In this document: one piece after another, positions 9,705 through 47,486 of the stretch
How the letters are laid out: the number at the start of each line of letters is the position of its first letter
How positions within the stretch are numbered: position 1 is the stretch's first letter
Sequence record: MK250017.1
Direction: 5' to 3' (one strand)
DNA: 64,000 nucleotides
Notes under the pieces: generated by a model
The model's database searches: none
What the model was told of the DNA's origin: nothing
Seen by the model: only the letters and a program-made list of their open reading frames with translations
Position numbers and translations under genes: made by a program

Positions 9705-10874
9705 TTAATATATTACTAATCTTACTGTGTTCATTACTTTTCCACCTGGTGTTTTGAATGTAATAATAGCATAATTATATTCATAACCATCCCATTCACA
9801 TTCACGGTCTTCACCATATCCATTATAACGGTCACCATCTTCCAACTTATATTTAAATTCAATAGTTGCTTTCCAATTTGGCTTCTTTATAGATTGTAAT
9901 GTTGTTTTATAATCCTTACATTTTTTTGAATCATGTGCAAGTAATCGTAATCCATATCTTTCAAAAATTTGACCACGTTTTCCTGCAACACTTTCTGCTG
10001 ATACTGTTGTTATTTCTAATGGTTTACATTTCAATACATTAACAATATACTTATTTAATGATTCAAATTCTTTACATGGTTTTGAAATAAAATGAATAAT
10101 ATCGATATATGTACTACGTTCGCTTCTTAACCACCCACTAGGACTATGTATCTCTGTTTTTTGTATATAACCAGGAACATCCACCTTATAAAGATCATAT
10201 CTATAAATATCTTCCTCTAATTGATCAACATCACCGTTAGGATAAAATTTAGATAATACTTTTTCATTCTTAAAATAAAAATCAACAATATTAATTTCAA
10301 TTACTGGTGATTTTTTTGATTTCTGTTCAGTAATATCTTTCTTTATAAGTTTTTTTAATATACCAACTTTATCATTTGATGATATACGAGGTTTTGATGT
10401 AGTTCTTGTATTTGTATTTGATGAACTATATGTATTCATACTTTTATCAGTAATACCAAAATCTTTTAATGTAATAGTACCTCCAATTTTAGTATTAACC
10501 CAATTAATAACGTTATTTGCATCTGCTGTATTACGTCTAAATAAATTAGTAAATGCTTCAATAGTTGCATTATCACGCTTAGGCATTTTTGCTTCAGCTT
10601 CACCAACAAAAGTCCAGATTAATTTAGGATTACCAAATGAAGCAAGTTTACATTTTCTACCTTGTTTAATAATACGTAGAACATATGATTGTTTTTGTGT
10701 TTCATCAACTAAATACAAATAATATACTGGATAACCAGTAGTACCATTAGCAATAAGTTTTATAATACTACCTCTGTAAGGTATATCATCAAAACTTGCA
10801 ATATTTTCAAAATTAAACTTAACAACTTTTTGTTCAGTTGTTGAAAGTGCTTCGAATAATCTATTAAATTTCAT
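9705..10874 (-). CDS. Putative virion internal protein
   Basis: MKFNRLFEA start (capsid-targeting-like); AATAAATA at 10901-10908. Confidence 0.6.
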   Translation of the reverse strand: MKFNRLFEALSTTEQKVVKFNFENIASFDDIPYRGSIIKLIANGTTGYPVYYLYLVDETQKQSYVLRIIKQGRKCKLASFGNPKLIWTFVGEAEAKMPKRDNATIEAFTNLFRRNTADANNVINWVNTKIGGTITLKDFGITDKSMNTYSSSNTNTRTTSKPRISSNDKVGILKKLIKKDITEQKSKKSPVIEINIVDFYFKNEKVLSKFYPNGDVDQLEEDIYRYDLYKVDVPGYIQKTEIHSPSGWLRSERSTYIDIIHFISKPCKEFESLNKYIVNVLKCKPLEITTVSAESVAGKRGQIFERYGLRLLAHDSKKCKDYKTTLQSIKKPNWKATIEFKYKLEDGDRYNGYGEDRECEWDGYEYNYAIITFKTPGGKVMNTVRLVIY

Positions 10875-10903
10875 TATTAAAAATATTTTAATGTTTAATA
10901 TAT

Positions 10904-11602
10904 TTATTTTCTACGAATTGCTCTAATTGGTAATGATGATAACATATCATATATAGTTATACCAATATTATTTGCATTTAATATTTTATATCCATAATTA
11001 AAATCATATCCGTCATACTCAGTAGAACTCCAGAAACATGCATCTGTTTTATCCTGTACTTTTTTTCCTTTAACAAAACCTGTTGAAGGAATAATTATGA
11101 ATTTATTAGGATTTTTTAATGATGAAACTTTAAATGCAATACCATTTCTTCCTACTCGTATTTGTGATACATCTGTATTATTAATTAATTCTTCAATATC
11201 TTTTTTAGAAGGTATATCCCAACTGGTTCCTAATATAAATTCAGGAACTGAATTATATTTTATTGTTTTATTTTTTAAACGACTATATAATAACTCTACA
11301 TAAGAATCCCAGTTAATACCAGCTGCACTATCTAGTGAAATTTTATCTAATGTAAATCCTTTTCGTCTAAAATAACCTCCTGTTTTTGTTGGTCTAGTTG
11401 CTCCGATATTTCTATCACACCATAAGTTTCCTGATGGTAAATCTAAATCAACAGCTTCATATTCAATTTTATCTTTTCCTATAGTTACACCTGTTACTTT
11501 TTCGGCAAATACCGTATCTATGGAATCTTTATCTGATGCTAAAATATTATCAGTTTCTTCATCAAATAAAGATTCCATAAGTATTTTTATATTTTTATTC
11601 AT
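10904..11602 (-). CDS. DUF1566/Lcl-like domain protein with LMES propeptide
   Basis: VDLDLPSGNLWCDRNIGA, WDIPSKKDIEEL, FWSSTE motifs; AATAAATA at 11626-11633. Confidence 0.6.
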   Translation of the reverse strand: MNKNIKILMESLFDEETDNILASDKDSIDTVFAEKVTGVTIGKDKIEYEAVDLDLPSGNLWCDRNIGATRPTKTGGYFRRKGFTLDKISLDSAAGINWDSYVELLYSRLKNKTIKYNSVPEFILGTSWDIPSKKDIEELINNTDVSQIRVGRNGIAFKVSSLKNPNKFIIIPSTGFVKGKKVQDKTDACFWSSTEYDGYDFNYGYKILNANNIGITIYDMLSSLPIRAIRRK

Positions 11603-11632
11603 TAATATTATATTAATATTTAAAATATTTAT

Positions 11633-12775
11633 TTAATAACGTCCATATATACCACTTGGTTTATCTAATGTAAACTCATTTGTTATAACCCAATATGAAA
11701 TGCCGACATTATAACATAGTATAATAATAAGAATTGCGATATACCAACCAATACTTAATTCTATACTTAGATAATTAAAATCATTAAATTCTTTTCTATG
11801 CCAATTTTTATCAATTTGTGTATCTAACCATTCAGCATAATCTTTGAAATTAATATCAGGATGTTTTATAAAATAATCTCTTGTTTTAACTTCAAGCATA
11901 GGTTCATCACTCCACGAGAATGGATTACACCAAATAACTGTATTATTTTTCACACCGAGACATACGACAAATTCATTTTTATTTCCACCTTGCCAATATG
12001 CTTTTTGCATTTCCGCAACTTCTAATGATGGATTATTAAAGCATAGAATAAAAACATGTATTTGATTTTTTGGACCTCTATAACCATTTAAATATCGTAC
12101 TGCATCAATATCAGTATCAGTCGCAGTGAAACCAAGAATAGGATTTTGATCATTATTTTTAATTTCTGGATAATCAAATAACTTATTTTCCTTAATTTCT
12201 TCTTCACTCATATTTCCGTATTTGAATATAGAATATGATGAAGCTTTAACTTTATTTTGATATAAATGTGTCCACGTTACAGGATAAGAGTTTTCTCTTG
12301 TTCTATTCCATGATGTAACATATGCATCGCCATCTTTTGATCTATATGATCTATGCATATCTTTAAAAACAGCAGGCATATTTAATTTATAACAAATTAA
12401 TTTATATTCATCTTCAGATACATCATTTGTTTCACCTGTTACTGTTTCATATACATATCGTTTAGGATGATAACGCCGTTCCGGAACTACATATGTTTCT
12501 GTACGAGTTTTACCTTTACCACATGAAACCGTTCTTGTATGTGTTATCATAACAGTTTCATCCCAATCTTCATAATATGTTATTTTACTTACCAAATCAC
12601 TTAAATATTCTTTATCTAATGATGATATATAAACAAATGAATATTTAAGAGCAAAAAATAACAATATTGATGGAACAAGTACAACTACATATTCCCACCA
12701 TGCTGTTTTTTCTCTAAATTTAAATGCAAGTATTCCCACTGTAACAATAGGAATTAAAAAGATTAATATTTCCAT
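11633..12775 (-). CDS. Conserved phage membrane protein
   Basis: Two N-terminal and one C-terminal TM helices around a soluble domain. Confidence 0.7.
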   Translation of the reverse strand: MEILIFLIPIVTVGILAFKFREKTAWWEYVVVLVPSILLFFALKYSFVYISSLDKEYLSDLVSKITYYEDWDETVMITHTRTVSCGKGKTRTETYVVPERRYHPKRYVYETVTGETNDVSEDEYKLICYKLNMPAVFKDMHRSYRSKDGDAYVTSWNRTRENSYPVTWTHLYQNKVKASSYSIFKYGNMSEEEIKENKLFDYPEIKNNDQNPILGFTATDTDIDAVRYLNGYRGPKNQIHVFILCFNNPSLEVAEMQKAYWQGGNKNEFVVCLGVKNNTVIWCNPFSWSDEPMLEVKTRDYFIKHPDINFKDYAEWLDTQIDKNWHRKEFNDFNYLSIELSIGWYIAILIIILCYNVGISYWVITNEFTLDKPSGIYGRY

Positions 12776-12815
12776 ATTTAATTAATACTATTTACTGATA
12801 TTCATATTTATAATA

Positions 12816-12869: not shown

Positions 12870-13325
12870 TCAAGATTTCTCATATTTCTTTTTTAATTGT
12901 TCATATAATTTACGTTCATTATCTTCATTTTCTTTTTTATTCTTTTCCTCGATATATGTTTTGAATCTATTATAACGTTTATCACGCTCTTTATAATAGT
13001 CATCTCCATTTTTCAGAAAGTCTTCAAGTTGTTTTGCTGTTAAACCTCGCGTTGAATAATCATCATGCTCACCTCTTCCATAATAATCATTCCACTCAAT
13101 ATAATATAACCCATTAAATTTAGATATTTCAATATATGTTATATTACAAGATTCTACATCTACATCATCATTACAGAATGAATGAAGAAACTGCTTATAT
13201 GATTTTTTACTTGTAAATTCTTTTATAAACTTCTGTTTATATTCTTTGTATTTCTGTAATGAATTATTGTATTCTTTTTCTATTTCATTAAATTTCTCAA
13301 ATGAAAAATTAGTATTATTATCCAT
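12870..13325 (-). CDS. Hypothetical protein, tandem paralog of 13413..13859
   Basis: MDN..FSF start and LYExLKKKYEKS end shared. Confidence 0.75.
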   Translation of the reverse strand: MDNNTNFSFEKFNEIEKEYNNSLQKYKEYKQKFIKEFTSKKSYKQFLHSFCNDDVDVESCNITYIEISKFNGLYYIEWNDYYGRGEHDDYSTRGLTAKQLEDFLKNGDDYYKERDKRYNRFKTYIEEKNKKENEDNERKLYEQLKKKYEKS

Positions 13326-13412: not shown

Positions 13413-13859
13413 TCAAGATTTCTCATATTTCTTTTTCAAACGTTCATATAATTCCCTTTCTTCTTTATCTTGATCTATATATTCATTATTTTTTGCATTT
13501 TGAATACGTTCATAACGTTCTTTAACTTTCTCATAATATTCATCTCCATTTTTGAAAAAGTCATCAATCTGCTTTATTGTTAAAGGTTTAGTCATAAATG
13601 ATTCAGTTTCACCAAGAAAAGAATCATCCCATTGAATATAAAATATATCACCGTATCTTAATAACTGAATAAATGAAATATTTTGATTAAATACGTCTAT
13701 ATCTTTATCATCTCTATGTTTATTCAAGAAATATTTATATGATTTCATATTCTCAAATGCAACACTAAAAGATTTTATATGTTCATTATATTTACGTAAG
13801 ATGTCTGCAAATTTATCATCATCTTCTACATACTGTTTAAATGAAAAAGTATTATCCAT
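13413..13859 (-). CDS. Hypothetical protein, tandem paralog of 12870..13325
   Basis: See paralog. Confidence 0.75.
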   Translation of the reverse strand: MDNTFSFKQYVEDDDKFADILRKYNEHIKSFSVAFENMKSYKYFLNKHRDDKDIDVFNQNISFIQLLRYGDIFYIQWDDSFLGETESFMTKPLTIKQIDDFFKNGDEYYEKVKERYERIQNAKNNEYIDQDKEERELYERLKKKYEKS

Positions 13860-15200: not shown

Positions 15201-16955
15201 TTAAATATTATCATAAGTTTGTTCAAGAATCTTTGCATAATCCATATGGTAACCAAGTGGATGTTCTGATTCTTGTACAGGTTTCATAATAGGTTTCTGT
15301 GCAACTTTATAACGACGAACGAATTCTTCATTCATTACTCGCTGTGCTTCTCTGGTACGAAGACCAGTTTTCTCCCAGAATTCATCTACATCTTGTTTAT
15401 TTTCAAGAACCCAGTAACGAGCCATATTTTCAATAGCATCCTGCTCTTGAAGTGGTGCTTTTGTATAAAGTTCAATATCTTTAGGATCTGCTAATCTTAA
15501 CCAGTTTTTGAGAACACGCTTTTCTGCAAGTAGAGGAACATTCCATTGATTGTTAATATCTTCTATCTTATAGATATTATGTTCAACTACATATTTCATA
15601 CACTTCTTTTTCTGTGTAGGTTTAAGAGCTGCAAATTTAGCAAAATTTTCAGGAGATAATGAAATAGAGAATGGATAACGTGAAACAATTTGTTCTTTAA
15701 TACTTTCTTTCTTTTCAAGATTGTCAAGAAGATCCTGAAATTCTTCCATATCTTTTTCAGTTTCTGCTGCAATTCTTTCTGCTTTTTCTGTAGATGTTTT
15801 TGAGTCTTCATCAGCAGGCGCTGCCTCATCTGCCTCATCATTTGCAGTATCTGTATCGGAAACATCTTCTGAATCATCTGACTTATCTGCATCGCCATCA
15901 TCAGCTTTATCTTCATCTGACTGTCCTTCAATGTCGATAATATCCGCACGTTTTTCATCTTTATCATCACTGTCTTCATCAGATGATTCGCCATCAGCAT
16001 CTTCTGATGTAATATCAAGAATTAAGGCACGTTTCTTCTGTTTCTCTTCATCTGTTGGTTCTGACTTATTAGTATCTGTAGATGTATTTGTATCATTATC
16101 TTTATTATCATCCGATTTATCATCTTTATTATCACTATCAGATGATGAATTATCTGCACCATCAGGTGTTACATCAGCTTCAGGTAATTTGAATTCTTCT
16201 TCATCTTCCTCAAGTAATGGCTTAGATAAATCTTTTAGGTTAACAGGCTTGTTTTTCATTTCCATACATTTTTCATTAATTGGCGCTTCTTGCTCTAATT
16301 CATTAACAGTAACGCCTTCCATAAGAACTTTATATTTCTTATTAGTTGTTTCTTTCTGTGATTTTTGAGCAGAAACAGATTCATTAAGATATGACATAGT
16401 ATTTACACCAAGTGATTCATTGATTCTATCAAGACGTGCTTCTGCAAAACCTGGTGTACATACAATATCATAAGTGAATATTTGAGCGATTTCAACTTCA
16501 TGTGTTTTTTCATCTACATCACCTGCTGCACGAGAAGATACAAATAAAGGATAACCAGCTTCAACTAATTCCTGTGCGATTTTACCGTTTGGTGTATCAA
16601 GGATTTCAAGTTTTCCCATTACATTATGATTCTCCTGATCATACCAAAGATCTGTAATTTTATGAGAGGCTTCTTTTAATTGAATATCAAAACGTCCTTC
16701 AGGATGATCTAATTCACCAAGAATTGAACCACTTTGTTTAATCATTTCACGTAAATATCCAAGATGACGTAAAACTTCCTTTTCCGGATAACTTCTATTG
16801 TTTCTGTTAATTACAACATGTCCAGGTACAGAGCATGCAGTAAAAACACCAGAGAATATATATTTCTTATTATTTGGTGTACTGTCAAAGGCTTCATTAA
16901 GAGTAAGAGGCTGCAATGACTTACTTTTTATCATTAATTTACTATTCTTTGTCAT
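15201..16955 (-). CDS. Prohead protease (T4 gp21-like) fused to an acidic scaffold-like region
   Basis: NRNNRSYP, LGELDHP, VSSRAAG, YDIVCTPGFAEA motifs; long D/E-rich linker; AATAAATA at 16982 and 16999. Confidence 0.85.
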   Translation of the reverse strand: MTKNSKLMIKSKSLQPLTLNEAFDSTPNNKKYIFSGVFTACSVPGHVVINRNNRSYPEKEVLRHLGYLREMIKQSGSILGELDHPEGRFDIQLKEASHKITDLWYDQENHNVMGKLEILDTPNGKIAQELVEAGYPLFVSSRAAGDVDEKTHEVEIAQIFTYDIVCTPGFAEARLDRINESLGVNTMSYLNESVSAQKSQKETTNKKYKVLMEGVTVNELEQEAPINEKCMEMKNKPVNLKDLSKPLLEEDEEEFKLPEADVTPDGADNSSSDSDNKDDKSDDNKDNDTNTSTDTNKSEPTDEEKQKKRALILDITSEDADGESSDEDSDDKDEKRADIIDIEGQSDEDKADDGDADKSDDSEDVSDTDTANDEADEAAPADEDSKTSTEKAERIAAETEKDMEEFQDLLDNLEKKESIKEQIVSRYPFSISLSPENFAKFAALKPTQKKKCMKYVVEHNIYKIEDINNQWNVPLLAEKRVLKNWLRLADPKDIELYTKAPLQEQDAIENMARYWVLENKQDVDEFWEKTGLRTREAQRVMNEEFVRRYKVAQKPIMKPVQESEHPLGYHMDYAKILEQTYDNI

Positions 16956-17050: not shown

Positions 17051-17752
17051 ATGAATAAAAATATAAAACATTTATTAGAATATATTGTTAACGAAGAAAA
17101 TATACAATTAACTAATAAATTGAATAATAATGGTGATTTTCTAAATAATATTATAACTTATTTTAAAACAAATTTCAAGCCTCAAATTTTAGTAAATATT
17201 AAAATAAAAGATGAAAACATTAAAAATAATGATTTTTATAAAGCAGTAATGATAAATATCGCGAGTTAGTTAATAGAATATTATGTCGCGAATTTTATGC
17301 TTAATATGTTTAAATCTAAATTTAAATTTAATGGTAATTTAATTTTTGATGAAGATAAAGATGATGAAAATAATAAAATTACTATTAAAAGAGGTAGAGT
17401 TCATGATTTTATAGTATAGTTTAAAAATGATGATAAGGATGATTTTTATAATTAGCCATTTGAAATTAAATCATATAATAAAGAATTCGGTAATATTACA
17501 TTAACAGATAATCAAAGAAAAATAAGTAATATAGGAACGCCTATTTATGTTTTATGCAATTATGATTTAAACGATAATGCAATAATTATTACAGATATTG
17601 ATTTAGTATTAGGAAGTAACTTATTAAGTTACTTATTAAGTAAGTCACTATTTAATAATGATAAGGCAGGTTCAAGACATATCAGTAAAGATGTAGGAAG
17701 AATTAATATATATAAAAGAGAATAGGAATAGTTAAATTCTTCAACTAAATAA
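17051..17752 (+). CDS. Hypothetical protein (TAG=Gln), possible PD-(D/E)XK nuclease fold
   Basis: Open for 233 aa with 5 TAG; HDFIV..FEIKS; AATAAATA at 17022. Confidence 0.7.
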
Positions 17753-18584: not shown

Positions 18585-19607
18585 TTAAATATTGCTAAAT
18601 AATGATTCTCGATAATATTCATCAAACTTATTTTCTTTTAATGCATAATTAATAGCTTTTTGTAACTTAAAAAAATAATTTGAAATAAATTTATTAATAT
18701 CATATTTAACGTTATCTGCATTTTGTTTATCTAATGATGTATATTTATTATTCTATAACATTTTTCTTATGGATGATTCCTTAATATCATTTTTTAATAA
18801 TTTCTAAATATGTCCATAATAACCTATAATATTTAATAATAATACATATTCATAATTATTAGAAACAATATCATTTTTTAATAATATATTAAAATCAAGG
18901 AGATATTTGTCGTATAAATTAATATTTTTAAAATATTGTATAAGTGAACCAATAACATCATTATTTTTTATTATTTCATTAATTTCTTCATTTGTTAAAT
19001 CACATATCAATCTATATTGTTGATTTACTCTTGCTTGAATTTCTGTAGGAGACATTAAATATAATATATCTTTAACTTTATCAAATAAATCATCTGATAT
19101 ATTGAAAATATTATCAATATTATCTGCCATATTTTTATTATTTAAAATAATATTTTTATTTTTGAATTTATACATATGTTTTACATGTATAAATTCATGA
19201 TGAAATATTGATTTAATTGTTTTTATATTAAACCCTTTTACTACATTTGCATTTATTTTTACAATATGATCATTTAAATTTATATCAATTCCTCGAATAT
19301 CAGTTGTAGCATTTGCATTACTATTCCAATTTGCTTCCCAATATACAAATATAGAATATAAGTCTTCATTTTCGGTTTCTTTACATTTAACACATTCAGA
19401 CGTTTCTATATTTAATTTCCATCCAGTATAAATTAATCCATACATACGTCCTCTACTTTTTATAAATGTATCGTATATATCATCAACAACATCATCAAAT
19501 GTTCTTAAAATATGAAATTCTTCTAATAATGTATTTGATATTGCATCTATTAATGATTCCTATAATCTTAATCTTAAATTTCGTGGTATTGTATTATAAC
19601 AACTCAT
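18585..19607 (-). CDS. Zincin-like HExxH metalloprotein (TAG=Gln)
   Basis: 340 aa when TAG=Q; HHEFIH and PTEIQARV. Confidence 0.7.
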
Positions 19608-20380: not shown

Positions 20381-21766
20381 TTAATTTTGTTTAATTTTAT
20401 TAATCTCATTATTAATGTTTAACAAGAATTTCTTAAATTCATTGATATTCCATCCTGTATATGAATTAAACTCTTCATATTTAATATCTAACGATAATAA
20501 TTCTCGTTTAATATAATATTCTATATTAGTATTATCTACAATTTCTTTTATATCGTATAAGTCATTAACAACTTTATTTTTTATAAGAATTTTCATTGGT
20601 GGAAATCCGTCTCCTTTGTTAACATTATCTTCTGAAACTTCTGAACATATATCATATAATAATTCAAATTCACTGTATGTTAATACATCTATTGTTAATA
20701 AATCTTCATTTTGATATGTATCTGGATCCTATCCTTCTAATGTGATAATATCTTCTAAATCCATAAAATAATCATCATCTGTTAAATGATTAATTGCATC
20801 AATATCGATGTTTACTCTATATATTTTAGGATAATAATGGTTATCCCCACCATCACCATATTCAAATTCACCTACATCAAACTGTTCTGTACTTCTATCA
20901 AATCCAAGTTTTAAGAAATCCCATTCATCCAATACTCTTGCAGATTTATGTTCTTTCTATGTTTTTGTACCTGTATCATACAGATCAAAATAACCGTTTT
21001 TAAATGAACGTAAATCAATTAATGATAAATCCTAATTAAATGATGTACAACCATATAGTAAATAACTTATATCCATATTTTTTGTTATATTCCATTTCTA
21101 TATAGGCTAATTGAATTTTCTACAATTATAAAACATATATGATAAATTTTCAGCACTAGATATATCCCAATTACTTATATCCTAATTAAATGATGAACAC
21201 CCATAAAACATAGAATCAAATCTTGTAACTTTACTTACATTCCAATTACTAATATTGCTGTTGAACGTTGAACATTCATAAAACATATTTACCATTGATG
21301 TTACTTTAGATGTATCCCATTTACTTAAATCACAAATATCTTTACATCCGTTAAATGTACCAACCATGGATGTTACATGTGATGTATCCCAATCTGAAAC
21401 ATTCCAAAATATATACTGCCTGTTAAATGTACCAACATTAAATAATTGGTCTAACATGGTAACATTAGAAATATCAAGCCAATTTAAATTAAAAGCATCT
21501 ACCTTATCTTTATATAATTGTTTTTTTATATCTGCTATTATATGAACCAATTCACTAAAATCTTTTACTTTATATTTAAATGCATCCTAACATACTAATT
21601 CTAAATCATCATCAGATACAACCATGCCTTTTAATAATTGTTCATGTATTTTTTTAGCATCATCTTCTAATAAATCATTAGTCATACCTATGTTATCATC
21701 ATTAAATAATTCATCATCGTCATCATCAAATAACGATTCTAATAATTTATTTATTTCTTTAATCAT
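20381..21766 (-). CDS. BspA/DUF285 repeat protein (TAG=Gln)
   Basis: Three track ORFs join in frame; repeats WDTSxVTSMxxMF and FNQDISNW, with Q encoded by TAG. Confidence 0.85.
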
Positions 21767-21793: not shown

Positions 21794-22120
21794 TTACCAA
21801 TGATAACCTAATTCTGCACCCATTGCAGCTAATACAAGTCTCGATGTTAGTAAATTTCCTAATGTACCTTTTTCATCTATACCTAAACATTTACATATAG
21901 CTTTCATAATACTCTACCCAATTGTTGATGAAACTGCACTTCCCAATAATGCAGTAAATAAACCTTCATCTACTATATCATCTAAAGGAACACCTTCTTT
22001 TTTTGCAATTTCATTTGCTTCAACAATATAATCATATACTTTTTTACTATCCATTATTTGCTTAGGTGTATAATTACTTAAATCAATACCTTCAAATAAA
22101 TTATTATATTTTTCACTCAT
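21794..22120 (-). CDS. Small putative virion protein (TAG=Gln)
   Basis: 108 aa, NLFEG start, hydrophobic Gly-rich C-terminus; AATAAATA at 22154. Confidence 0.7.
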
Positions 22121-22256
22121 AATAGTTATTATTTTAGTTAGCTTATTTTAAGATATTTATTTTTAATAATAAATAAGTTAAATAAATAATAAAAAGATAA
22201 TTCAACTATATGAATTGTTTTTATAAAAGTAAAAAATAATTTTCGAAAATTATAAT

Positions 22257-23507
22257 ATGAAAAAAACAACAAAAACTGTAAATAGTATGAGAAGTCAGAA
22301 AGCACTTTATAATGCTATTATGGAATCAGTAACTCCTCAGATTGCTAGATTAGTAAAAGAAGCAGAGGAAGCAGATGATGAAGACAAAGCATCTGATGAT
22401 GTAAAGGATGCAGAGAAAAATGAATCAAACGATGTTGATGAAGCAGCACTTAATGAACTTTTTGGTTTTGGTTCATCTGTACAGAAACCAGAGAAAGCAT
22501 TATCTCTTGAAAATTCTGATGATGAAAATGCAGATTTATTTATTGCATGGTGTGCATACTATATGTCTAAATGTAGTAATGACGCAAAGAAAGGAATGGA
22601 TGCATTTTTTAAAGCTTCTGGTGATGTTATTAAGAAAGCACCTATGATGATTGTAAAAGGTATTCTTAAGTTAATGTCAGGTGCAATTAAAGGTTCTGTA
22701 TTTGGTGTAAGTACAGTTGCAGCTGTTGTTCTTGGTAGTATCTCTATGTTGGTACGTTTAACAGTTTCAGGTGTAGAGAAAGCAAAGGAAGCACTTTCGC
22801 AATTATATAAGACTATTAGTCAGGGTATTACTACATTCTATAAGAATTTTACTGGTGGTGCAGAAAAAATGGCAAATGATTCATCAGATAAATTAACTGT
22901 ATGGGTTGGTGTTATTTCTGGTGCACTTATGGCATGTGCAAATAAGGTTCAAGGTGCAGTTGAAACATTAGGTAATTTCTTTAAACAAGTTCTTGCAGAT
23001 GCAAAGGCAAAGAAAGATGGAGCTGTTCTTCTTGTAAAGACATGGTTACAGGCAAAATCAGACGCAGTTAAATCATGGATTACTGAAACAGGTGGTGAGA
23101 TTCGTAAGACTGTTATTGAAGCATGGAATGCAATGGATAAGAAAGTTCGTAATGCATATGATAAAGTTGCAAAGAAACTTGAAGACTGGATGAATGATAT
23201 TAAGGAATTAGTTCAGGAAATAGGTACAAAAATTTCTGATGCTGCTGATAAAGCAAAGGATGTTGTTATTGATAAGAAAGATAAGGCCCTTGTATGGGGT
23301 ATTCAGAAAGGTGTTAAGGGACTTTCAAAGAATTATACAGAAGATCAGGTTGTAGCACTTGTTCGTAAATGTTATAATGAGTCTGTTGTACCTAATACAA
23401 GAACTGGTAATATTGTTATCAATGAAGCATATTTACATGCAAAAGGTACTAGAGCACGTGTACTTTATGAAAGAAAACAAGCACGTCGTGGAAAACTTTT
23501 AAAATGA
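22257..23507 (+). CDS. Helical amphipathic putative virion protein
   Basis: ALYNAIMES motif, hydrophobic central helices, apolipoprotein-like periodicity; AATAAATA at 22181. Confidence 0.7.
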   Translation: MKKTTKTVNSMRSQKALYNAIMESVTPQIARLVKEAEEADDEDKASDDVKDAEKNESNDVDEAALNELFGFGSSVQKPEKALSLENSDDENADLFIAWCAYYMSKCSNDAKKGMDAFFKASGDVIKKAPMMIVKGILKLMSGAIKGSVFGVSTVAAVVLGSISMLVRLTVSGVEKAKEALSQLYKTISQGITTFYKNFTGGAEKMANDSSDKLTVWVGVISGALMACANKVQGAVETLGNFFKQVLADAKAKKDGAVLLVKTWLQAKSDAVKSWITETGGEIRKTVIEAWNAMDKKVRNAYDKVAKKLEDWMNDIKELVQEIGTKISDAADKAKDVVIDKKDKALVWGIQKGVKGLSKNYTEDQVVALVRKCYNESVVPNTRTGNIVINEAYLHAKGTRARVLYERKQARRGKLLK

Positions 23508-32421: not shown

Positions 32422-32445
32422 CATNNNNNNNNNNNNNNNNNNNNN

Positions 32446-33287: not shown

Positions 33288-34154
33288 ATGAATTCTAAAT
33301 AGATTGGAAAGTTAATATATAATTTAGATCTAGGAAAATTTAATAATAAAACAAAATTATTTGAATCAAATAATAAAGATAATTGGTGGAGAAATGAAGA
33401 AACGTTTAATACAATAAAATATCATCCATTAAATTCTAATACAAATAATTTATTATATAAAGAATATGAACAGGAATATTTATATGAAGGATTAATATGT
33501 TCAGCAGATCCAAATAAAACAAAAGATATATTAAATAGGAATGCAATTGGTTTTATACATGATATAAGAATTGTTTATAATCCATTATAGATAGATATGA
33601 AAACGCCTGTAATAGATTTTTTTATATATAAAGAAGACTATTATGATTTAGAATATGGAAAATTAGCTTATAATGAATTATTAACATTAATTAATAATTT
33701 AGGTTATTTCGTATCAGGTAAGAAAGAATTATCAACTATTATTAATATTGTTATAATGCCGAAATTTTTATATGAAGTTACAGATGAAATATATAAAGAA
33801 GATGGTATATTATATCATATAACACCGTTATAGAATAAAAAGAAAATTTTATAGAAAGGATTAATTCCAAAATATAAAAATTATAGATTAGATAATTATC
33901 CTGATAGAATATATTTTTATAGAAGTAATCAAAAAAATAAATTAGATTTATTATGTAAAAATTTATCATGTGATACATGTATAAAAGAATGGTTAATTCT
34001 TAAAATTAATCTTAAGGATAGGAGAAGTTATAAAGAAAATGATAAATCTACAATGTATCGTTTTTTTGAAGATCCAAAATCATAGTATGGCGTATTTACA
34101 TACGAAAATATAGATCCACAATGTATAGAATTTTATAAAGAAGTTAAATTATAA
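33288..34154 (+). CDS. ADP-ribosyltransferase/KptA-fold protein (TAG=Gln)
   Basis: LYHITP..KILQKGLIPK..YPDRIYF..ILKINL..TYENIDP; 288 aa; AATAAATA at 33255. Confidence 0.65.
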
Positions 34155-39968: not shown

Positions 39969-40985
39969 TTACATGATATATTGTAAAAGCATTCTTGTTT
40001 CTTCATCTTGTCCGAGTTTTTTATTAGCCTCTCTCAAAATCTAATTAACTCGTGTTTCTGTCATATTGTTTTCTTCTGCAATTTGCCAGGTATTTTTCTC
40101 AGGACGACCATTAATAGCATAGCATGCACAAACAATTTCACCATTTCTTTTACCCATAACTCTCTTGATATTATCTTCAAGTTCTCTTGTTAAATCTTCA
40201 TTTTCAAGACTACTTCCAGGCTCATTGAAAACATTATTTGTTGTCATATCACCTAATGTTACTTTAGAATCTCCATCATCTCCAACAGATTGATCTAAAC
40301 TATTTGCACGAGCATTTGCTTTCATCGTCTATACAAATGAATCATAAGTTAAATTAGGATGTTTCTTAACTAATACATCATAAATATCATCAATATCAGG
40401 TTCATAACCATTCTTATTAAATAAACGTTCTTTTACACGAGCAGCTTCACGAGCAATACTACCCATATTACGAGGAACTGCCATATGACCACCTACTTCA
40501 TCAACTGCCATCATAATCTCACGACGAATATACCAAATAGCATATGATACAAATTTTACATCTTTTTCTGGTGTACTTGGATCATATGTTTCAGCTGCTT
40601 TCATAAGTCCAATATTACCATATTGAATTAAATCTTCTTTAGGAATATTAAGATTTTTATACTTATTAACAACAGTAACAACAAACGGAAGATTTGCAGA
40701 AACTAATTTATTTTTTGCTGCCTCTACCTATCTCTTATTTGACGAATGCTGAATAATATCTGCAAGTTTGCATTCATCTTCATGTGTTAATCTTTGTTTC
40801 TTATTAATTGCTTTTAAATATGCTACAAATGATTTTGCTGTATTTTCATCCTATGTAATAGTAAAATCATCATGTAAATCCATATGCATTCCATTATTAT
40901 CTTCATTAAGAGTATTTCGTAATGAACGAGAAATACCTTCCATAAGGCTATTATACAATGCTTTCTTTTTATTAATTACTCTCAT
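39969..40985 (-). CDS. RpoD-like sigma-70 factor with N-terminal extension (TAG=Gln, 4 TAG)
   Basis: Region 1.2 YLKAINK..LTHEDE; region 2 LVSANLPFVV..DLIQYGNIGLMKAAETYDP..KFVSYAIWYIRREI; region 4 TETRVNQIL; 338 aa. Confidence 0.9.
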
Positions 40986-42296: not shown

Positions 42297-42698
42297 TTAA
42301 TATTCATCATCTATTTCATCACATAAATCTAAAAATTCCTCCTGTATTGCATTATCCAAAATTTGAAATTCTCTGCGTTCGTTATATTCGTCTTCTGATT
42401 TAATCGCATCTGCCAAATCTGCATCAATATCATATACTTTTCTTGTATCTGTTGACATAACACGAATCATATTATGAATTTCTTTTTGCTTTCTGAATCC
42501 ATAATCAGAAATATATCGTTCTACAAGAATTTCTTTTTTAAATATAGGAATAATACAAATGAGTTTCGTATTCATTTCATCTTTCTCACATGAATGAATA
42601 CCAGGAATCAACAATACAGACTTACCTGTTTCTACATTTATATTATATGATGTATTACTGCGAAGAAATACAAGATCACCAATTTTAAATTCTGCCAT
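42297..42698 (-). CDS. Hypothetical protein
   Basis: FKIGDLV start. Confidence 0.65.
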   Translation of the reverse strand: MAEFKIGDLVFLRSNTSYNINVETGKSVLLIPGIHSCEKDEMNTKLICIIPIFKKEILVERYISDYGFRKQKEIHNMIRVMSTDTRKVYDIDADLADAIKSEDEYNERREFQILDNAIQEEFLDLCDEIDDEY

Positions 42699-42738
42699 AA
42701 TTTTAATATCTTATTAATATTGTTTATTATTTACAATA

Positions 42739-42746
42739 CAAAGATA
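42739..42746 (-). promoter_or_regulatory. Bacteroidetes-type -7 promoter element
   Basis: TATCTTTG upstream of 42698. Confidence 0.75.
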
Positions 42747-42852
42747 CACATATTATTTGAATTAAAAAAATAAAAAAAGAAAAATCTTAATATATTATTT
42801 CTATAATAAGAATATATATATTAAGATTTAACGTTTTAAGCCTATGAAATAG

Positions 42853-42953
42853 TAGATGTAGGGAGACTTGAACTCCCAAATTCCATACCTAGAATACCAT
42901 GAAATAAACTCAAAATATTATTGAGTTGCGTTTACCCATTTCGCCATACATCT
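42853..42953 (-). tRNA. Class II (Leu/Tyr-like) tRNA-like gene with aberrant anticodon loop
   Basis: Acceptor AGATGTA/TACATCT + A73; D arm GGCGAAATGGGTAAACGC; T arm GGGAG-TTCAAGT-CTCCC; anticodon arm ACTCA-ATAATATTT-TGAGT; ~30-nt variable region. Confidence 0.75.
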
Positions 42954-43165
42954 ATAAAAAGGTAGTTTCTTATCCGAATGCAGTCTAACTACCAAACCTT
43001 GAGTATCACATTTCGTACGTTTCCCAGATATTGTGACATCTGCTTACTATATTACTATAATAAGTTAATCCTTGAATCACTTAAACCTAATTTAATAGGG
43101 ATACATGTCAATCCATGATTAAAAAGTCTTTAGCTTAACAATATTAAAAAATATCGCAAGGATTG

Positions 43166-43237
43166 CAGCCCTAATAAGATTCGAACTTATAACATCACAA
43201 TTAAATATTATGTGCTCTACCATTGAGCTATAGGGCC
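43166..43237 (-). tRNA. tRNA-Lys(TTT)-like gene with A33
   Basis: GGCCCTA/TAGGGCT, GCTC/GAGC D stem, CATAA-TATTTAA-TTGTG, ATAAG-TTCGAAT-CTTAT. Confidence 0.8.
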
Positions 43238-43324
43238 AAGGTCTTATTTTAAATTTCCACGCAATAAGACCTTAGATTTTTGTAGATATGTGTTCATAGT
43301 ACTTAAACTAATGCTTGTAAATAT

Positions 43325-43416
43325 ACTGACGTGTTAACCACTTCACCAATCGCCCATATATATTGTTTTTTGCTTTAATTGAGGGCAATACGGGAATCGA
43401 ACCCGTGTTGGTCAGT
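43325..43416 (-). tRNA. Circularly permuted tRNA-like gene (3' half 43382-43416 precedes 5' half 43325-43355)
   Basis: 3' half ACTGA-CCAAC-ACGGG-TTCGATT-CCCGT-ATTGCCC-T; 26-nt spacer; 5' half GGGCGAT-TG-GTG..CAC-G-TCAGT; acceptor 7/7 and anticodon stem 5/5 complementary. Confidence 0.75.
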
Positions 43417-43560
43417 AAAATTCATGATGTATCACGAATGAACTATGACAATCTAACATTTACTGTAATACTAAAGCTCTTGACTCAATGCTAATGCTAA
43501 AATCTAGGATTTTGTTTATGCTAAATGTAATCAAGCTAATGCTTTAGTCAATTTACATTA

Positions 43561-43589
43561 TTTATATATCAAACAATATACAAAGTCTA
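43561..43589 (-). promoter_or_regulatory. Sigma-70-type promoter TAGACT-N17-TATAAA
   Basis: -35 at 43584-43589, -10 at 43561-43566; upstream of the tRNA-like cluster. Confidence 0.6.
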
Positions 43590-43652
43590 TTTTTATTCTT
43601 AAAATAATTTCACTTAAATAAATATCATAAATGAAATAGTTATCGTAACTAA

Positions 43653-44870
43653 ATGAAAAAGAATAATTATCTATATGAAGAAATGATACAGGATATTTCT
43701 GTTATCGTTAAACATCGAATAAATGAAGCATATGATAATCAACTTCTTGAAGAATATGGTGCAAAAGATATATTTAATGATGTAATGAAAGAAGCTACAA
43801 AAGATGGAAAAATCTTTTATACACATCTTAAAAAATTTATTATTTATGTTATCAAAAAACTTCAAGAAACAAATCAATATAAGCAAGCAGAAAAAATGAT
43901 GAATGCATATGTTCAGAAAATATAGAAATATATAAATGAACATAAAAAGATTACACCTCGTCGTATGTTAAAAATTACAGTTACTGTATTAGCAATATAT
44001 GGCGGTGTATCAATGGTATAGGATTGTAAATCACTAATAAAATCACTACAAAATAATGTAGAAACATATGAGCAAACAGCAGAAGATATTCCAGATTTAC
44101 AATAGGAAAATATTACTGTTGATGAACCAGAAAATTTTGTAGTCAATGTAAAGGATGAAGCAAAATAGACATTAAGTGTTAAACATGTTTCATAGGAAGA
44201 TATTAATAATTCTCCTGCAAATAAATTCGAACATGATAAGAATTTCAATTTTAAATCAAGTAACAGTGCACGTGAATTTATTAAAAAACATGAAATGCTT
44301 CTACTTTATCCTTATTATGCAAATGAAGCTGAAGAAAAACAAGGTAAAGTAACTATAGGTTATGGACATGTTGTATTAGAAACTGATGGTGCATTATATC
44401 AGCAAATACAACAATTAAAAAAGAAAGGTCTTATAAAGCAGTCATTTACTCGTGATAAGAAAACAGGAAAACTTATATTAAATCCTAAACATTGTAAACC
44501 AATTATTACAAAAGTGCAAGCAAATAAATTATTCTTAAAAGATATTAAGATAGCAGAAGATAGAGCATATAAAGCATTGCAAGATATGCCTACTGATGAT
44601 GATAATGTTAAGTGCTATATGTTATATAATCAAAAAATAAGAGATGGATTAACATCACTATGTTATAATGCTGGTAATCTTAAACATGATAAGTATTCAT
44701 TTATAACAAAAGGACTTGCAAAATGTAGATATGATTATAAAAACCAGAAAATTAATCCAGGTGATTATAATGTATCATTCAGTTATTTTAAAAATATTAA
44801 AGATAATCCTAATAGAAGAAATGAAGAATATAAGTTATTCTTTATGAATGCAAATAAATCAATGTCATAA
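43653..44870 (+). CDS. Lysozyme (GH24/T4L-like) with N-terminal propeptide-like segment and TM helix (TAG=Gln, 5 TAG)
   Basis: FIKKHE..VTIGYGH..DGLTSLCYNAG..RRNEE; 405 aa; AATAAATA at 43617. Confidence 0.85.
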
Positions 44871-44891
44871 AAATAAAAAAATATTAATATA

Positions 44892-46175
44892 ATGAAGAAA
44901 TTATTTGAAGCAAAACAAAAACCATTAGTTGTTTATAATCCTGCTGATATATTTATGAAATATAATATGAAACCAGGAGATTATGTTTCTATTGCATATA
45001 TATCAGACGTTTTACAAGGTGAATCAAGCCATCCTATTGCAAGAAGTGGTTCTCAAAAACAATGTTATAATATTAATGATGAAACAGATGCATAGTTAAT
45101 GGAATATATTGACAACCTTCCTAATAATAGAATTAAACAATTATTAACAGAATTTAGAGAATCTAAGAAATATTAGGATTTTTTAAATGGTACCAGTAAA
45201 TTAAAAACATGTAAATTAAATTTAACGACAGAACATATTATTAAAGTAAGTCATCTTACATGTAACTGGAAAGATTCAAAAGCATTGGCAAAATTCTATG
45301 ATAAGTAGCGAGATGCTATTTGGAAACTCCGTCAAGATTATGGATTTGAAGATGGTTTTGATGATAATTATGATAGAGATGAAGATGATGTAAACTGGAG
45401 AGATTCACATGATGGTAGAAATATAATGCCTCGTACAAAAAAGAATTATAACGGTAATGTATATAAAGATGCTACTATCCTTCCTGGCATTTATGCAAGT
45501 CTTTCAGATCCTGATAAAGTTGCATTTAGATTCGCATATAATCAAAGATCTAGTCATAAAGATTCTGATTATTATTATGTAAATGGTGATGGAACATTAT
45601 TTCCTTTAAATAAAGCATTCGTTACATTCTTAACATATGCATATAAGAAAAATAAAGAAGATGAAATTTATCCTACATAGGAAGAAAGAGAATTTGTTGC
45701 TAAACTTAAACAAATTACTGATGAAGCAGCAAGTACAGCAGAAATGACTCTTAGCTGTAATTAGATTTTATTTATGAAGTCAACTGCACGCACATCAAAG
45801 AACGCAAGAATTTCTCAAAATATTCCATTTGTATGGATTAATACAAAAGCAGTTGTCAATAAATATGATTTTATTAATCCAACTGAATTAAATAACATTA
45901 TTAAAAATCTTGTGTATTCACTTGATGATACTGATGTTAATGGTACAATTGAAAATATCAATGTTAAAGGTAAATCAATAAGTGATCTTCTTAATATAGA
46001 TATGTCTGGTAAAGCAACTGCTGATCCTGCAACTATTAGACAACGTTTAGGAATTACAGAAGCATTACATATGTTAGCATATAAATTTACACAAACAAAA
46101 AAGAAACGTGCATTATATGAATCAATTATGAAAAATGTTTCTAAAACAATAAAAAGAAAATTACAATTAATCTAA
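44892..46175 (+). CDS. Putative virion protein (TAG=Gln, 5 TAG)
   Basis: Three track ORFs join; MKKLFEA start, RALYESIM C-terminal motif. Confidence 0.8.
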
Positions 46176-46181
46176 AATAAT

Positions 46182-46215
46182 AAAGAGATTGAATAATCAA
46201 ATATTCAATCTCTTT
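46182..46215. terminator. Bidirectional intrinsic terminator
   Basis: 14-bp IR aaagagattgaata/tattcaatctcttt between convergent genes. Confidence 0.75.
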
Positions 46216-46232
46216 TCTTTTATATTAAAAAA

Positions 46233-47486
46233 TTAAAATCTAATAAATGAAACTACTTTTGCAGAAACATTAGGATCTGCAATTTTGAATACCTTATCAG
46301 GATTAACCTATAACATGATATTTGCATCACCTTTATCTGCAACAGAAGATGTCCAATATCTACCGGTACCGATAATATCCATTACTTTATTAAGTTCTGG
46401 TAATGTAGGAAGATATGCACGTTCAAAAATTTGTGATTTTACTTCATTAACTTGTTCACTATTCAAACCATTTAATTGTAATTTCTTTATAGCCATTTGC
46501 TTTGCAAGTTTAGCAGCATTATTACCATTATCTTCAAGAATACTTGTATAAAAATTTCCTTTAATTTCCTCTTGATAATAATAATTAGATCCTGGTGTAA
46601 TCTCTAATTTCTATTTAGCACCAACTAGCTTTTTCTTAAAATAATATGAATCATATACATTATTATTTCCTGGATTACCCAATGTTGATTCCTATGAATC
46701 CAATATCATAAATACTGGTTTCTTATCTAATGACTAATAACTAGAAATAACACATTTAGCAAATGATCCCTATGCATCATTACTTAAAACTAAACCATCT
46801 ACTTCATCCCATTTAAGGAACATACCTTCATTTGCTTTTTTCAAAAAATTACCTACTGTTTTAAAATATGGTTTTAAATCTGCATATTTTTCACCAAATG
46901 GTTCATCTTCTGCAATTTCATCCTCTATATCTTCATCATTTGAATCTGATGTATCTACATCATCATAATCAGGATAATCTGTCTATGTAGTTTCTTCAGG
47001 TTCATCAACCTTTTTACTTACACTATCATCAAACCCATGTGAAACTATAGGTTTATCCTAAATAACTGGTTCATCTTCTATTGTATTATCATCTGTTTGC
47101 ACATCATCATAATCAGGATAATCAGGAGTCTATACTGGTTCATCCTAAGAAATATTACCATCGAATTCACCACCATTTTCAACATATAATTTCTGAATAT
47201 CTGCTATACTACCACCAGCATCTATATATGCATTACCAATATTCTTATATGCTTTTAATTTATTAATATCTGAATTATTATGTGGACATCCAACCTTCAT
47301 AGTAAGCAAACCTGCAACATATTTCTATAAAAGAACCTCTTTTGTATCTTTCTTCATTACCTTTGCATCTTCACCTAATGTTGAACGCAAACGACTTGAC
47401 ATTGAACTCATTGAAGCCCAAATTTTTGGATCAATTGTTCTCTATACACGGGCTTCATTTAATATATCATTTATAAATGTTCTCAT
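46233..47486 (-). CDS. Putative virion protein with acidic DYPDYDDV repeats and a DUF1566-like C-terminus (TAG=Gln, ~11 TAG)
   Basis: 417 aa open frame; ILNEA start; LPTLPELN..YWTSS; AATAAATA at 47514. Confidence 0.8.

What the first reader, a model, noticed from the sequence alone, without database searches (positions are those of the whole stretch)
9705..47486. Family of late proteins with capsid-targeting-like termini
Seen: genes behind AATAAATA repeatedly begin with a short segment ending in hydrophobic-x-E: MKFNRLFE|A (10874), MNKNIKILME|S (11602), MNKNIKHLLE|Y (17051), ..SNTLLE|E (19607), MIKEINKLLE|S (21766), MSEKYNNLFE|G (22120), ..AIME|S (22257), ..KLFE|S and LYE|G (33288), ..RINE|A (43653), MKKLFE|A (44892), ..DILNE|A (47486). 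The prohead protease has internal LNE/INE sites. Established: T4 internal proteins use an N-terminal capsid-targeting sequence removed by gp21 after [LI]-x-E. Inference: this predicts an injected cargo set (ART, lysozyme, zincin, nuclease-like, sigma, repeat proteins).
Basis: partly seen in the sequence, partly recalled or inferred. Interest (0 to 1): 0.75.

Follow-up and report, generated by a model that had tools for sequence, protein, structure and literature searches.

The report
Portable head-targeting leaders in Lak megaphage
About thirty otherwise unrelated late proteins of the uncultivated gut megaphage Lak-A1 begin with shared short leader peptides that end in Leu-x-Glu, the cutting signal of the T4-type head protease this phage encodes, so they are probably loaded into the capsid as T4 loads its internal proteins; the set includes a sigma factor.

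Summary
The window is Prevotella megaphage Lak-A1 (24% GC). TAG is read as Gln in its late genes, and the window holds two tRNA-CUA genes. The loose motif alone is weak. L-x-E within residues 2-30 occurs in 33% of late-promoter genes, 15% of other genes and 10% of early-promoter genes. Beneath it lie two conserved leader families: A (a 10-residue leader, cut site, then SLFDDD) and B (a 25-30-residue helix with a LYE site and a terminal [IL]NE site). Together they head 24-29 late proteins genome-wide, whose mature parts fall into 24 unrelated groups. No leader gene has an early promoter. The phage encodes a Peptidase_S77 (T4 gp21-type) prohead protease. Conserved LNE sites flank its catalytic domain, and the major capsid protein has a 64-residue N-terminal segment ending in LNE. 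Cargo with recognisable domains: a sigma-70 factor, a lysozyme-like protein, a tape-measure-like membrane protein, and DUF285 and FISUMP repeat proteins. Best reading: T4-style capsid-targeting propeptides. Cleavage, packaging and injection remain inference. New member of a known kind.

The parts
15201..16955 (-). Prohead protease (584 aa): N-terminal S77 catalytic domain, acidic middle region, conserved C-terminal domain. LNE sites at residues 19-21 and 190-192 flank the catalytic domain.
   Evidence: Pfam Peptidase_S77 9e-15; PHROG head maturation protease 2.4e-31; aligns to T4 gp21 structure 5JBL. Both LNE sites are conserved in an 88%-identical and a 38%-identical relative.
10851..10874 (-). 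Short leader MKFNRLFE| of gene 9705-10874 (389 aa, unknown fold)
   Evidence: Late motif at -34. L6, F7 and E8 are invariant in 21 homologues down to 42% identity, while leader length varies from 6 to 9 residues. Residues 1-19 have pLDDT below 50 in the model.
11573..11602 (-). A-type leader MNKNIKILME| (then SLFDEE...) of gene 10904-11602, whose cargo is a FISUMP-like domain
   Evidence: HMM built without window genes, E=7e-5; TIGR02145 1.9e-5, below its cut-off; late motif at -31.
17051..17080 (+). A-type first half only, MNKNIKHLLE|, of gene 17051-17752 (233 aa, 5 TAG)
   Evidence: Late motif at -29. Weak HMM hit, 0.06 leave-out and 3e-4 iterated. No Lak-B orthologue found.
19521..19607 (-). 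Weak B-like N-terminus (..RLQE|S.. ..NTLLE|E) of gene 18585-19607, which carries an HExxH motif
   Evidence: Sites are kept in the 76%-identical Lak-B-type orthologue (RLYE|S, NTLLE|E). No family hit.
21737..21766 (-). A-type leader MIKEINKLLE| (then SLFDDDDD) of gene 20381-21766 (461 aa, 7 TAG), a DUF285 repeat protein
   Evidence: Leave-out HMM 3e-4; DUF285 7e-48. The orthologue at 48% identity keeps LME|SLFDDDD.
22091..22120 (-). Short leader-like MSEKYNNLFE|G of gene 21794-22120 (108 aa)
   Evidence: Late motif at -41. The orthologue is 96% identical, so conservation says little.
22257..22325 (+). B-type leader (..KALYNAIME|S) of gene 22257-23507 (416 aa), a tape-measure-like protein with a hydrophobic segment
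   Evidence: HMM 0.016 leave-out, 1e-7 iterated; PHROG tape-measure families down to 6.5e-7; AATAAATA at 22168 and 22181.
33288..33365 (+). Doubtful case: KLFE|S at residue 26 of gene 33288-34154
   Evidence: Late motif at -33, but no leader-family hit. The Lak-B1 counterpart is a 71-aa fragment.
40902..40985 (-). B-type leader (..KKALYNSLME|G..TLNE|D) of sigma-70 family gene 39969-40985 (338 aa, 4 TAG)
   Evidence: Sigma70 r2/r3/r4; RpoD/RpoS-like 4e-37, with family matches starting at residues 26-90. Leave-out HMM 2e-3. The Lak-B1 orthologue has the canonical leader ..KKALYE|SIMKSVSKTIRKKLNE|A. The terminal [IL]NE is invariant in 120 orthologues. GATAAATA lies at -43.
43653..43727 (+). B-type leader (..YLYE|E ... 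RINE|A) of gene 43653-44870 (405 aa, 5 TAG), lysozyme-like
   Evidence: Leave-out HMM 2e-4; Phage_lysozyme 2.2e-4 and endolysin phrog_7 2.4e-7; leader kept in Lak-B1; late motif at -36.
44892..44909 (+). Short N-terminal MKKLFE|A of gene 44892-46175 (427 aa, 5 TAG)
   Evidence: Identical in Lak-B1. The gene starts 22 nt after the stop of 43653-44870.
46098..46172 (+). C-terminal copy of the B-type module (..KKRALYE|SIMKNVSKTIKRKLQLI stop) on gene 44892-46175, preceded by ITE|A
   Evidence: Leave-out HMM 1.7e-10; conserved at the C-terminus of the Lak-B1 orthologue; 51/56 nt identical to the leader of another gene about 290 kb away.
47454..47486 (-). Shortened B-type leader MRTFINDILNE|A of gene 46233-47486 (417 aa, 11 TAG), one of a five-member paralogue family
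   Evidence: The paralogues have full B-type leaders, all ending [IL]NE| just before a conserved ..RTID.K[LI]W segment. Late motifs at 47514 and 47532.
48335..50230 (-). Portal protein (631 aa, 10 TAG). It has no leader and marks this region as a head-gene cluster.
   Evidence: Portal_T4 1e-58; late motif at 50255.
52652..53631 (-). Two tRNA genes with anticodon CUA (52652-52724 and 53557-53631), which justify reading TAG as an amino acid
   Evidence: ARAGORN. TAG aligns with CAA/CAG Gln codons in orthologues. Published for Lak phages (PMC8346664).

Best explanation
The leaders are capsid-targeting propeptides of the T4 kind. Late in infection, Lak-A1 makes about 25-30 proteins with a portable N-terminal leader; one protein carries it at the C-terminus. 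Type A is a 10-residue leader ending L-[LMIV]-E, followed by SLFDDD and an acidic run. Type B is a 25-30-residue amphipathic helix with a LYE site and a terminal [IL]NE site. There are also a few 6-10-residue leaders ending LFE. The leader docks the protein to the assembling prohead core. That core probably includes the protease's own acidic and C-terminal extension. The gp21-family serine protease then cuts after the Glu of L/I-x-E. This frees the mature protein inside the head and trims the capsid protein (after LNE-64) and the protease itself (LNE-21, LNE-192). Part of the cargo would leave with the DNA at the next infection: the sigma-70 factor, the lysozyme-like protein and the tape-measure-like membrane protein. 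Shown here: the motif, its portability, its N-terminal position, its restriction to late genes, and the protease family. Inferred: docking, cleavage, packaging and ejection.
For: The protease belongs to Pfam S77, the T4 gp21 family. Unbiased scans find only L at P3 and only E at P1 enriched in residues 2-30 of late genes (p=2e-5). There is no enrichment in protein bodies, and 4/41 early-promoter genes have the motif. The most enriched N-terminal tripeptides are LYE, ESL, YES, KAL and LFD. Leader HMMs built without window genes hit seven window sites. Iterated HMMs find 24 genes: 15 have the late motif against 105/568 overall (OR 8.4, p=1.2e-6), and none has the early motif. The mature parts of 29 leader proteins form 24 BLAST-unrelated groups. 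Among 1.84 billion proteins, the A-leader profile finds 50, and 47 of those matches start at residue 1. The capsid protein (Gp23 family) has IYE-31 and LNE-64, and the LNE is kept in a distant relative. Protease LNE-21 and LNE-192 are kept at 38% identity. In sigma orthologues the leader sequence drifts, but the terminal [IL]NE and the residues right after it are fixed. The other full-length sigma-70 gene in the genome has no leader, no late motif and no TAG. The three ORFs with the highest [LI]xE density in the genome are all late, and one is the protease. T4 precedents come from the literature: the L/I-X-E rule, a 10-residue CTS, propeptides of 7-65 residues, Alt cut at both ends, and LIE-9 in gp21 (PMC9026906, PMC3012670, PMC5694885).
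Against: There are no protein-level data: Lak phages are uncultivated, and I found no virion proteome. L-x-E within the first 30 residues also occurs in 15% of non-late genes, so single cases are not individually significant. Ile at P3 is not enriched overall. In type A the residues after the supposed cut (SLFDDD) are as conserved as those before it. Type A cargo (DUF285 and FISUMP repeats) resembles surface-binding proteins. In the 9705-10874 family the residues after LFE are also conserved. The capsid protein's N-terminus could not be aligned with T4 gp23's cleavage site.
Confidence: 0.6

Rival explanations
1. The leaders, at least type A, are uncleaved assembly or attachment tags. A short helix plus an acidic linker would anchor varied binding proteins (repeat or lectin-like domains) to the outside of the virion as fibres, whiskers or decoration. 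These proteins would be neither internal nor injected.
For: Type A cargo with recognisable domains is adhesin-like: DUF285 at 7e-48, FISUMP at 1.9e-5, and a weak LRR_EndoS hit. Conservation continues past the Glu into SLFDDD and the acidic run.
Against: Types A and B share one core, [KA]-L-[LY]-E-S-[LI]-[FM], and hybrid leaders exist. The B type sits on a sigma factor and a lysozyme-like protein, which have no role outside the particle. The motif matches the specificity of the phage's own protease family. Known fibre anchors are folded domains, not 10-residue peptides (general knowledge).
Confidence: 0.2
2. The shared N-termini have no targeting role. They would reflect recombination or gene conversion between late genes, or selection on the 5' ends of late mRNAs (A-rich codons such as MNKNIKK that favour initiation).
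For: The C-terminal module of 44892-46175 is 51/56 nt identical to a leader about 290 kb away. MNK/NKN starts are common in this AT-rich genome.
Against: mRNA effects do not explain conserved L-x-E, SLFDDD or the 25-residue B helix, nor the copy at a C-terminus. In sigma orthologues the peptide pattern is kept while its sequence changes. With 24% GC, identical peptides are expected to share most nucleotides anyway.
Confidence: 0.08
3. The pattern is chance: short hydrophobic-x-E strings are simply frequent in K/N/I/L/E-rich proteins of a 24% GC genome.
For: The background rate of [LI]xE is 0.011 per position, and 13-15% of non-late genes have a site near the N-terminus.
Against: Family-level E-values reach 1e-10 with models that never saw the window. 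The global hits are N-terminal only. Enrichment is limited to late genes and to the first 30 residues.
Confidence: 0.03

Closest known systems
T4 capsid targeting sequence (CTS) of internal proteins IPI-III and Alt, processed by gp21
   Same: A gp21-family protease; a short N-terminal leader (10 residues in type A, as in IPIII) ending L/I-x-E; attachment to unrelated cargo; late expression beside head genes; one protein with motifs at both ends, like Alt; a site near the protease's own N-terminus (LIE-9 in gp21, LNE-21 here).
   Different: The leader sequences are unrelated to T4's. Type B is a 25-30-residue helix with two sites. Type A carries a conserved acidic stretch after the site. There are far more cargo genes (about 25-30, against a handful). 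The cargo includes a sigma-70 factor. None of this has been tested at the protein level.
Propeptides of head and ejection proteins in phiKZ, 201phi2-1 and SPN3US giant phages
   Same: Many head proteins are processed after Glu. Propeptides hold several redundant sites. Diverged paralogues keep conserved N-termini. The protease cuts its own C-terminus. Transcription machinery is packaged (a virion RNA polymerase in those phages).
   Different: Those phages use S/A-x-E, and many of their propeptides exceed 100 residues. Here P3 is Leu (S and A are not enriched) and the leaders are short. The protease here hits the T4 family model directly.
Cargo-loading peptides of encapsulins and scaffold-docking helices such as the P22 scaffolding protein C-terminus
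   Same: A short portable peptide directs a protein into an HK97-fold shell and can work at a terminus.
   Different: Those peptides are not removed by a maturation protease, and they bind the shell protein itself. No sequence relation was tested or is claimed.

Membership tests
T4-type CTS / gp21-processed head proteins | The phage encodes a gp21-family (Peptidase S77) prohead protease | tested here: met
   Pfam PF03420 9e-15; PHROG 207 2.4e-31; aligned to 5JBL, with the SSR serine and DHP histidine segments matching.
T4-type CTS / gp21-processed head proteins | A short N-terminal propeptide ending in L/I-x-E | tested here: met
   Present at all listed N-termini. L at P3 and E at P1 are the only enriched residues. 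The sites are conserved in orthologues.
T4-type CTS / gp21-processed head proteins | The same leader heads otherwise unrelated proteins (portability) | tested here: met
   29 leader proteins fall into 24 BLAST-unrelated mature parts. Globally, 47 of 50 profile hits start at residue 1.
T4-type CTS / gp21-processed head proteins | Made late, together with head proteins | tested here: inconclusive
   Late-promoter-like motif in 15/24 leader genes against 105/568 overall, and none with the early motif. TAG codons occur in 14/24. Timing itself was not measured: the RNA-library data are contigs only.
T4-type CTS / gp21-processed head proteins | The capsid protein and the protease carry sites of the same type | tested here: met
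   Capsid protein IYE-31 and LNE-64, with LNE kept in a distant relative. Protease LNE-21 and LNE-192 are kept at 38% identity.
T4-type CTS / gp21-processed head proteins | The propeptide is removed and the mature protein is found in the head | not testable with these tools
   Needs virion proteomics or N-terminomics. A complex prediction of protease plus leader gave no verdict.
T4-type CTS / gp21-processed head proteins | The leader is sufficient to package a foreign protein | not testable with these tools
   Needs a packaging assay, and no cultured Lak phage exists.
phiKZ-type propeptides | Cleavage motif S/A-x-E | tested here: not met
   S and A at P3 are not enriched in late N-termini (7% versus 7%; 6% versus 4%).
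Sigma-70 family (cargo 39969-40985) | Regions 2, 3 and 4 | tested here: met
   PF04542 1.4e-12, PF04539 1.9e-6, PF04545 0.0088; TIGR02997 4e-37; phrog_351 1.5e-43.
Genetic code 15 (TAG = Gln) in late genes | In-frame TAG in long conserved ORFs, a suppressor tRNA, and TAG aligned with Gln codons | tested here: met
   Portal has 10 TAG and gene 46233-47486 has 11. Two tRNA-CUA genes. TAG aligns with Gln in Lak-A versus Lak-B orthologues. Published in PMC8346664.

The most novel reading that the evidence does not exclude
Lak megaphages use a small 'address code' of portable leader peptides to load some thirty unrelated proteins into the capsid. Among them is a sigma-70 factor made late, packaged, and delivered with the DNA to reprogramme the Prevotella RNA polymerase at the start of the next infection. 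If so, the ejected proteome of an uncultivated 540-kb phage, and of its relatives, could be read directly from sequence.
Probability: 0.3. Interest if true: 0.75.

Novelty: new member of a known kind. Interest (0 to 1): 0.6.

Why it matters
Lak phages are among the largest known phages. They are common in human and animal guts and have never been cultured, so nothing is known about what their virions carry. A sequence-readable packaging signal turns dozens of orphan genes into a concrete, testable list of candidate head-internal and ejected proteins. It points to a packaged sigma factor as a possible take-over device. It also extends the T4 targeting principle to a distant, recoded megaphage lineage. 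My literature searches found no report of such leaders in Lak phages.

Tried and rejected
Complex prediction of the full protease with the first 45 residues of 43653-44870 returned no answer (score 0.00, controls not run). It counts neither for nor against. The fold of 9705-10874 (pLDDT 79) had no PDB match at E<=0.001, and the protein atlas gave only weak leads, so the 'ART' idea found no support. The capsid protein's N-terminus could not be aligned to T4 gp23: the PDB sequence searches were blank or matched the C-terminal part only. The cleavage position is therefore not shown to be homologous. A region-limited word search with the A leader found only orthologues of the query. The first Lak-B1 stretch I fetched on the assumption of synteny was the wrong place, so I located orthologues by searching that record instead. 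The 38%-identical relative (L018) has no clear leader genes next to its protease. RNA-library runs are stored as contigs only, so they cannot show transcript starts behind AATAAATA. Pfam found nothing in most leader cargo outside the window.


Full report
IDENTITY AND GENETIC CODE. The 584-aa protein encoded at 15201-16955(-) is 100% identical to Prevotella phage Lak-A1 (541 kb, from human faeces) and 83% identical to Lak-B phages. The window has 24% GC. Under table 11 there are long stretches with no ORF. Reading TAG as a sense codon fills them with long ORFs, such as the portal at 48335-50230(-) with 10 TAG and gene 46233-47486(-) with 11 TAG. The genome itself supports this reading. Two tRNA genes with anticodon CUA lie at 52652-52724 and 53557-53631. 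TAG codons in one Lak clade align with Gln codons in the other. The recoding is published for Lak phages (PMC8346664). I therefore read late genes with TAG=Q.

ASSEMBLY GAPS. The N run at 28812-28843 lies inside ORF 28365-29378(-). Only one frame is open on both sides, and it is the same frame at the written length. The N run at 32425-32445 is intergenic. It directly follows the stop codon of 32446-33189(-) and cuts an early-promoter motif that precedes 31711-32316(-). Neither gap touches a listed N-terminus. To avoid looking up masked letters, I fetched the Lak-A1 record only outside the window and combined it with the window for genome-wide statistics: 568 ORFs of at least 60 aa.

THE OBSERVATION. 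All eleven N-termini are present as written. Two upstream motifs stand out genome-wide. TATCTTTG precedes 41 genes, 19 times expectation. It matches the Bacteroidetes -7 element (TAnnTTTG, from general knowledge) and so looks like an early promoter. AATAAATA precedes 85 genes, 16 times expectation, mostly 30-45 nt before the ATG. It resembles the T4 late promoter TATAAATA (again from general knowledge). Taken alone, the loose motif is weak. [LI]xE ending by residue 12 occurs in 26% of late-motif genes against 13% of the rest (p=0.0017), on a background of 0.011 per position. Unbiased scans are sharper. Among all a-x-E patterns in residues 2-30, only a=L is enriched in late genes. Among all L-x-b patterns, only b=E is enriched (35/105 versus 68/463, p=2e-5). 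Residues 61-90 show no enrichment, and only 4 of 41 early-promoter genes have the motif.

WHAT IS REALLY THERE. The most enriched N-terminal tripeptides in late genes are LYE (12/105 versus 5/463, p=2.5e-6), ESL, YES, KAL and LFD. They belong to two conserved leader families.
- Type A is M-N-K-x-I-K-x-L-[LMIV]-E, followed by S-L-F-D-D-D and an acidic run. There are 14 genes. In the window these are 10904-11602 and 20381-21766, plus the first ten residues of 17051-17752.
- Type B is ..K-K-A-L-Y-E-S-I-M-x-x-[VI]-S-K-x-[IV]-K-[KR]-x-[IL]-N-E. There are 11 genes. In the window these are 43653-44870, the sigma factor 39969-40985 and 22257-23507. A shortened form heads 46233-47486.
The two types share a core, [KA]-L-[LY]-E-S-[LI]-[FM], and hybrid leaders exist. 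Profiles built only from genes outside the window still hit the window's N-termini against all 7,778 six-frame segments of the genome. Type A scores are 7e-5, 3e-4 and 0.06. Type B scores are 2e-4, 2e-3 and 0.016. The B profile also hits the C-terminus of 44892-46175 at 1.7e-10. That C-terminal copy is conserved in Lak-B1.

Of the 24 genes defined by the iterated profiles, 15 have the strict late motif, against 105/568 overall (OR 8.4, p=1.2e-6). Most of the remainder have TATAAATA-like variants or TAG codons, and none has the early motif. The mature parts (residue 46 onward) of 29 leader proteins form 24 BLAST-unrelated groups, so the leader is a portable module and not a sign of whole-gene paralogy. 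A profile of the A leader was searched against 1.84 billion representative proteins. It finds 50 at E<=1e-3, and in 47 of them the match starts at residue 1.

LINK TO THE PROTEASE. The 584-aa protein is a gp21-family prohead protease: Pfam S77 at 9e-15, PHROG head maturation protease at 2.4e-31, and an alignment to the T4 gp21 structure 5JBL. After the catalytic domain come an acidic region and a conserved C-terminal domain. T4 gp21 cuts after L/I-X-E. The T4 CTS is the first 10 residues of IPIII, T4 propeptides range from 7 to 65 residues, Alt is cut at both ends, and gp21 has LIE-9 near its own N-terminus (PMC9026906; also PMC3012670 and PMC5694885). In Lak, LNE-21 and LNE-192 flank the catalytic domain, and both are conserved in an 88%-identical and a 38%-identical relative. 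The major capsid protein (Gp23 family, 3.5e-32, outside the window) has IYE-31 and LNE-64, and the LNE is kept in the distant relative. I could not show that this position is homologous to the T4 gp23 cut site. S and A at P3, the phiKZ rule, are not enriched. The three ORFs with the highest [LI]xE density in the genome are all late. They are a 1,685-aa acidic protein, a 136-aa protein with repeated LYE, and the protease itself. This fits core proteins that are cut into pieces.

CONSERVATION PATTERN. In the sigma factor, the Lak-A leader (..ALYNSLME|G..TLNE|D) and the Lak-B leader (..ALYE|SIMKSVSKTIRKKLNE|A) differ at about half their positions. The residues directly after the terminal site (NNGMHMDLHDDF) are identical. 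Across 120 orthologues the terminal [IL]NE never changes, whereas the first site moves or is lost. In the five-member family of 46233-47486, leaders vary from 11 to about 25 residues, yet all end [IL]NE| just before a conserved segment. In the family of 9705-10874, L6, F7 and E8 are invariant down to 42% identity while leader length varies. The model shows residues 1-19 as low-confidence, flexible sequence. Together these patterns point to selection for a site at a boundary.

THE CARGO.
- A sigma-70 family protein with regions 2-4 is confirmed. Family matches start after the leader.
- A lysozyme- or endolysin-like domain is confirmed at a borderline level.
- 22257-23507 is tape-measure-like with a hydrophobic segment.
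- DUF285 repeats are confirmed, and a FISUMP-like domain scores below its cut-off.
- 18585-19607 has an HExxH motif by eye only, with no family hit.
- Most cargo elsewhere in the genome has no Pfam family.
The genome's other full-length sigma-70 gene lacks a leader, a late motif and TAG codons. The two sigma genes are not close paralogues. This contrast fits the idea that the leader-bearing sigma factor is made late for packaging.

VERDICT. The T4-style reading, targeting propeptides cut by the head protease, is the best explanation at about 0.6. The main rival, chiefly for type A, is an uncleaved attachment tag for external binding proteins. Cleavage, packaging and ejection are all inferences. 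Individual single cases (33288, 19607, 17051, 22120) remain uncertain. The mechanism is a known kind (T4 CTS; giant-phage propeptides). Its presence in Lak phages, the two leader types, the C-terminal copy and the sigma-factor cargo appear to be undescribed.

Noticed in passing
window 52652-53631: Two tRNA-CUA (amber suppressor) genes flank gene 52755-53525(-). That gene has 11 in-frame TAG codons in 256 aa, and its N-terminus looks GIY-YIG-like by eye.
   Followed up: partly
window, upstream of 124-1059, 8955-9590, 11633-12775, 38442-38987, 39486-39863, 42297-42698, 51150-51953 (all - strand): A second, longer promoter-like motif, TGTATCTTTGTATTGTAAAT, precedes genes without TAG codons. Its core TATCTTTG fits the Bacteroidetes -7 element and occurs before 41 genes genome-wide, which suggests host-sigma early promoters.
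   Followed up: partly
window 15201-16955 (-), residues 193-584: The protease is fused to a roughly 200-residue Asp/Glu/Ser-rich region and a conserved C-terminal helical domain. Six [LI]xE sites cluster at residues 178-259. It looks like a protease-scaffold fusion.
   Followed up: partly
window 46098-46172 (+) and Lak-A1 record about 524.0 kb (L010:37226-37606): The C-terminal B-type module of 44892-46175 is 51/56 nt identical to the N-terminal leader of a 127-aa protein about 290 kb away. An RNA-library contig switches from one to the other at 46159. This could be gene conversion, or simply codon bias.
   Followed up: partly
window 61395-61880 (-): A small ORF (161 aa, 4 TAG) gives a weak Sigma70_r2 hit (2e-4) and starts MKKNIWKQLINE|F. 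It has no late motif and overlaps the start of the DnaJ-like gene 61846-62931.
   Followed up: no
window 47617-48246 (-): A papain-like (Peptidase_C1) late gene with 4 TAG codons lies between a leader gene and the portal. It is a second protease in the head-gene cluster, of unknown role.
   Followed up: no
window 35617-36864 (-): A gene with DUF723, zinc-ribbon and T5orf172 domains (homing-endonuclease-like) and 8 TAG codons lies directly upstream of 35278-35601 and downstream of 36940-38238.
   Followed up: no
L002:2482-7536 (Lak-A1 record, outside the window): A 1,685-aa late protein is 25% Asp+Glu and has 40 [LI]xE sites, the highest density in the genome (p=2e-5). It starts MGKLNKNELLE|G. 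It is a candidate scaffold or core protein that is cut into peptides.
   Followed up: partly
window 12870-13325 and 13413-13859 (-): Tandem paralogues of about 150 aa with the same C-terminal ..LYE[QR]LKKKYEKS tail. Neither has a late motif or a family hit.
   Followed up: no
window 42600-48400: Contigs from four metatranscriptome-labelled runs (wastewater, gut, pig) cover most of this stretch in roughly gene-sized pieces at 90-99% identity. Because these are contigs, this shows neither transcription nor transcript ends.
   Followed up: partly
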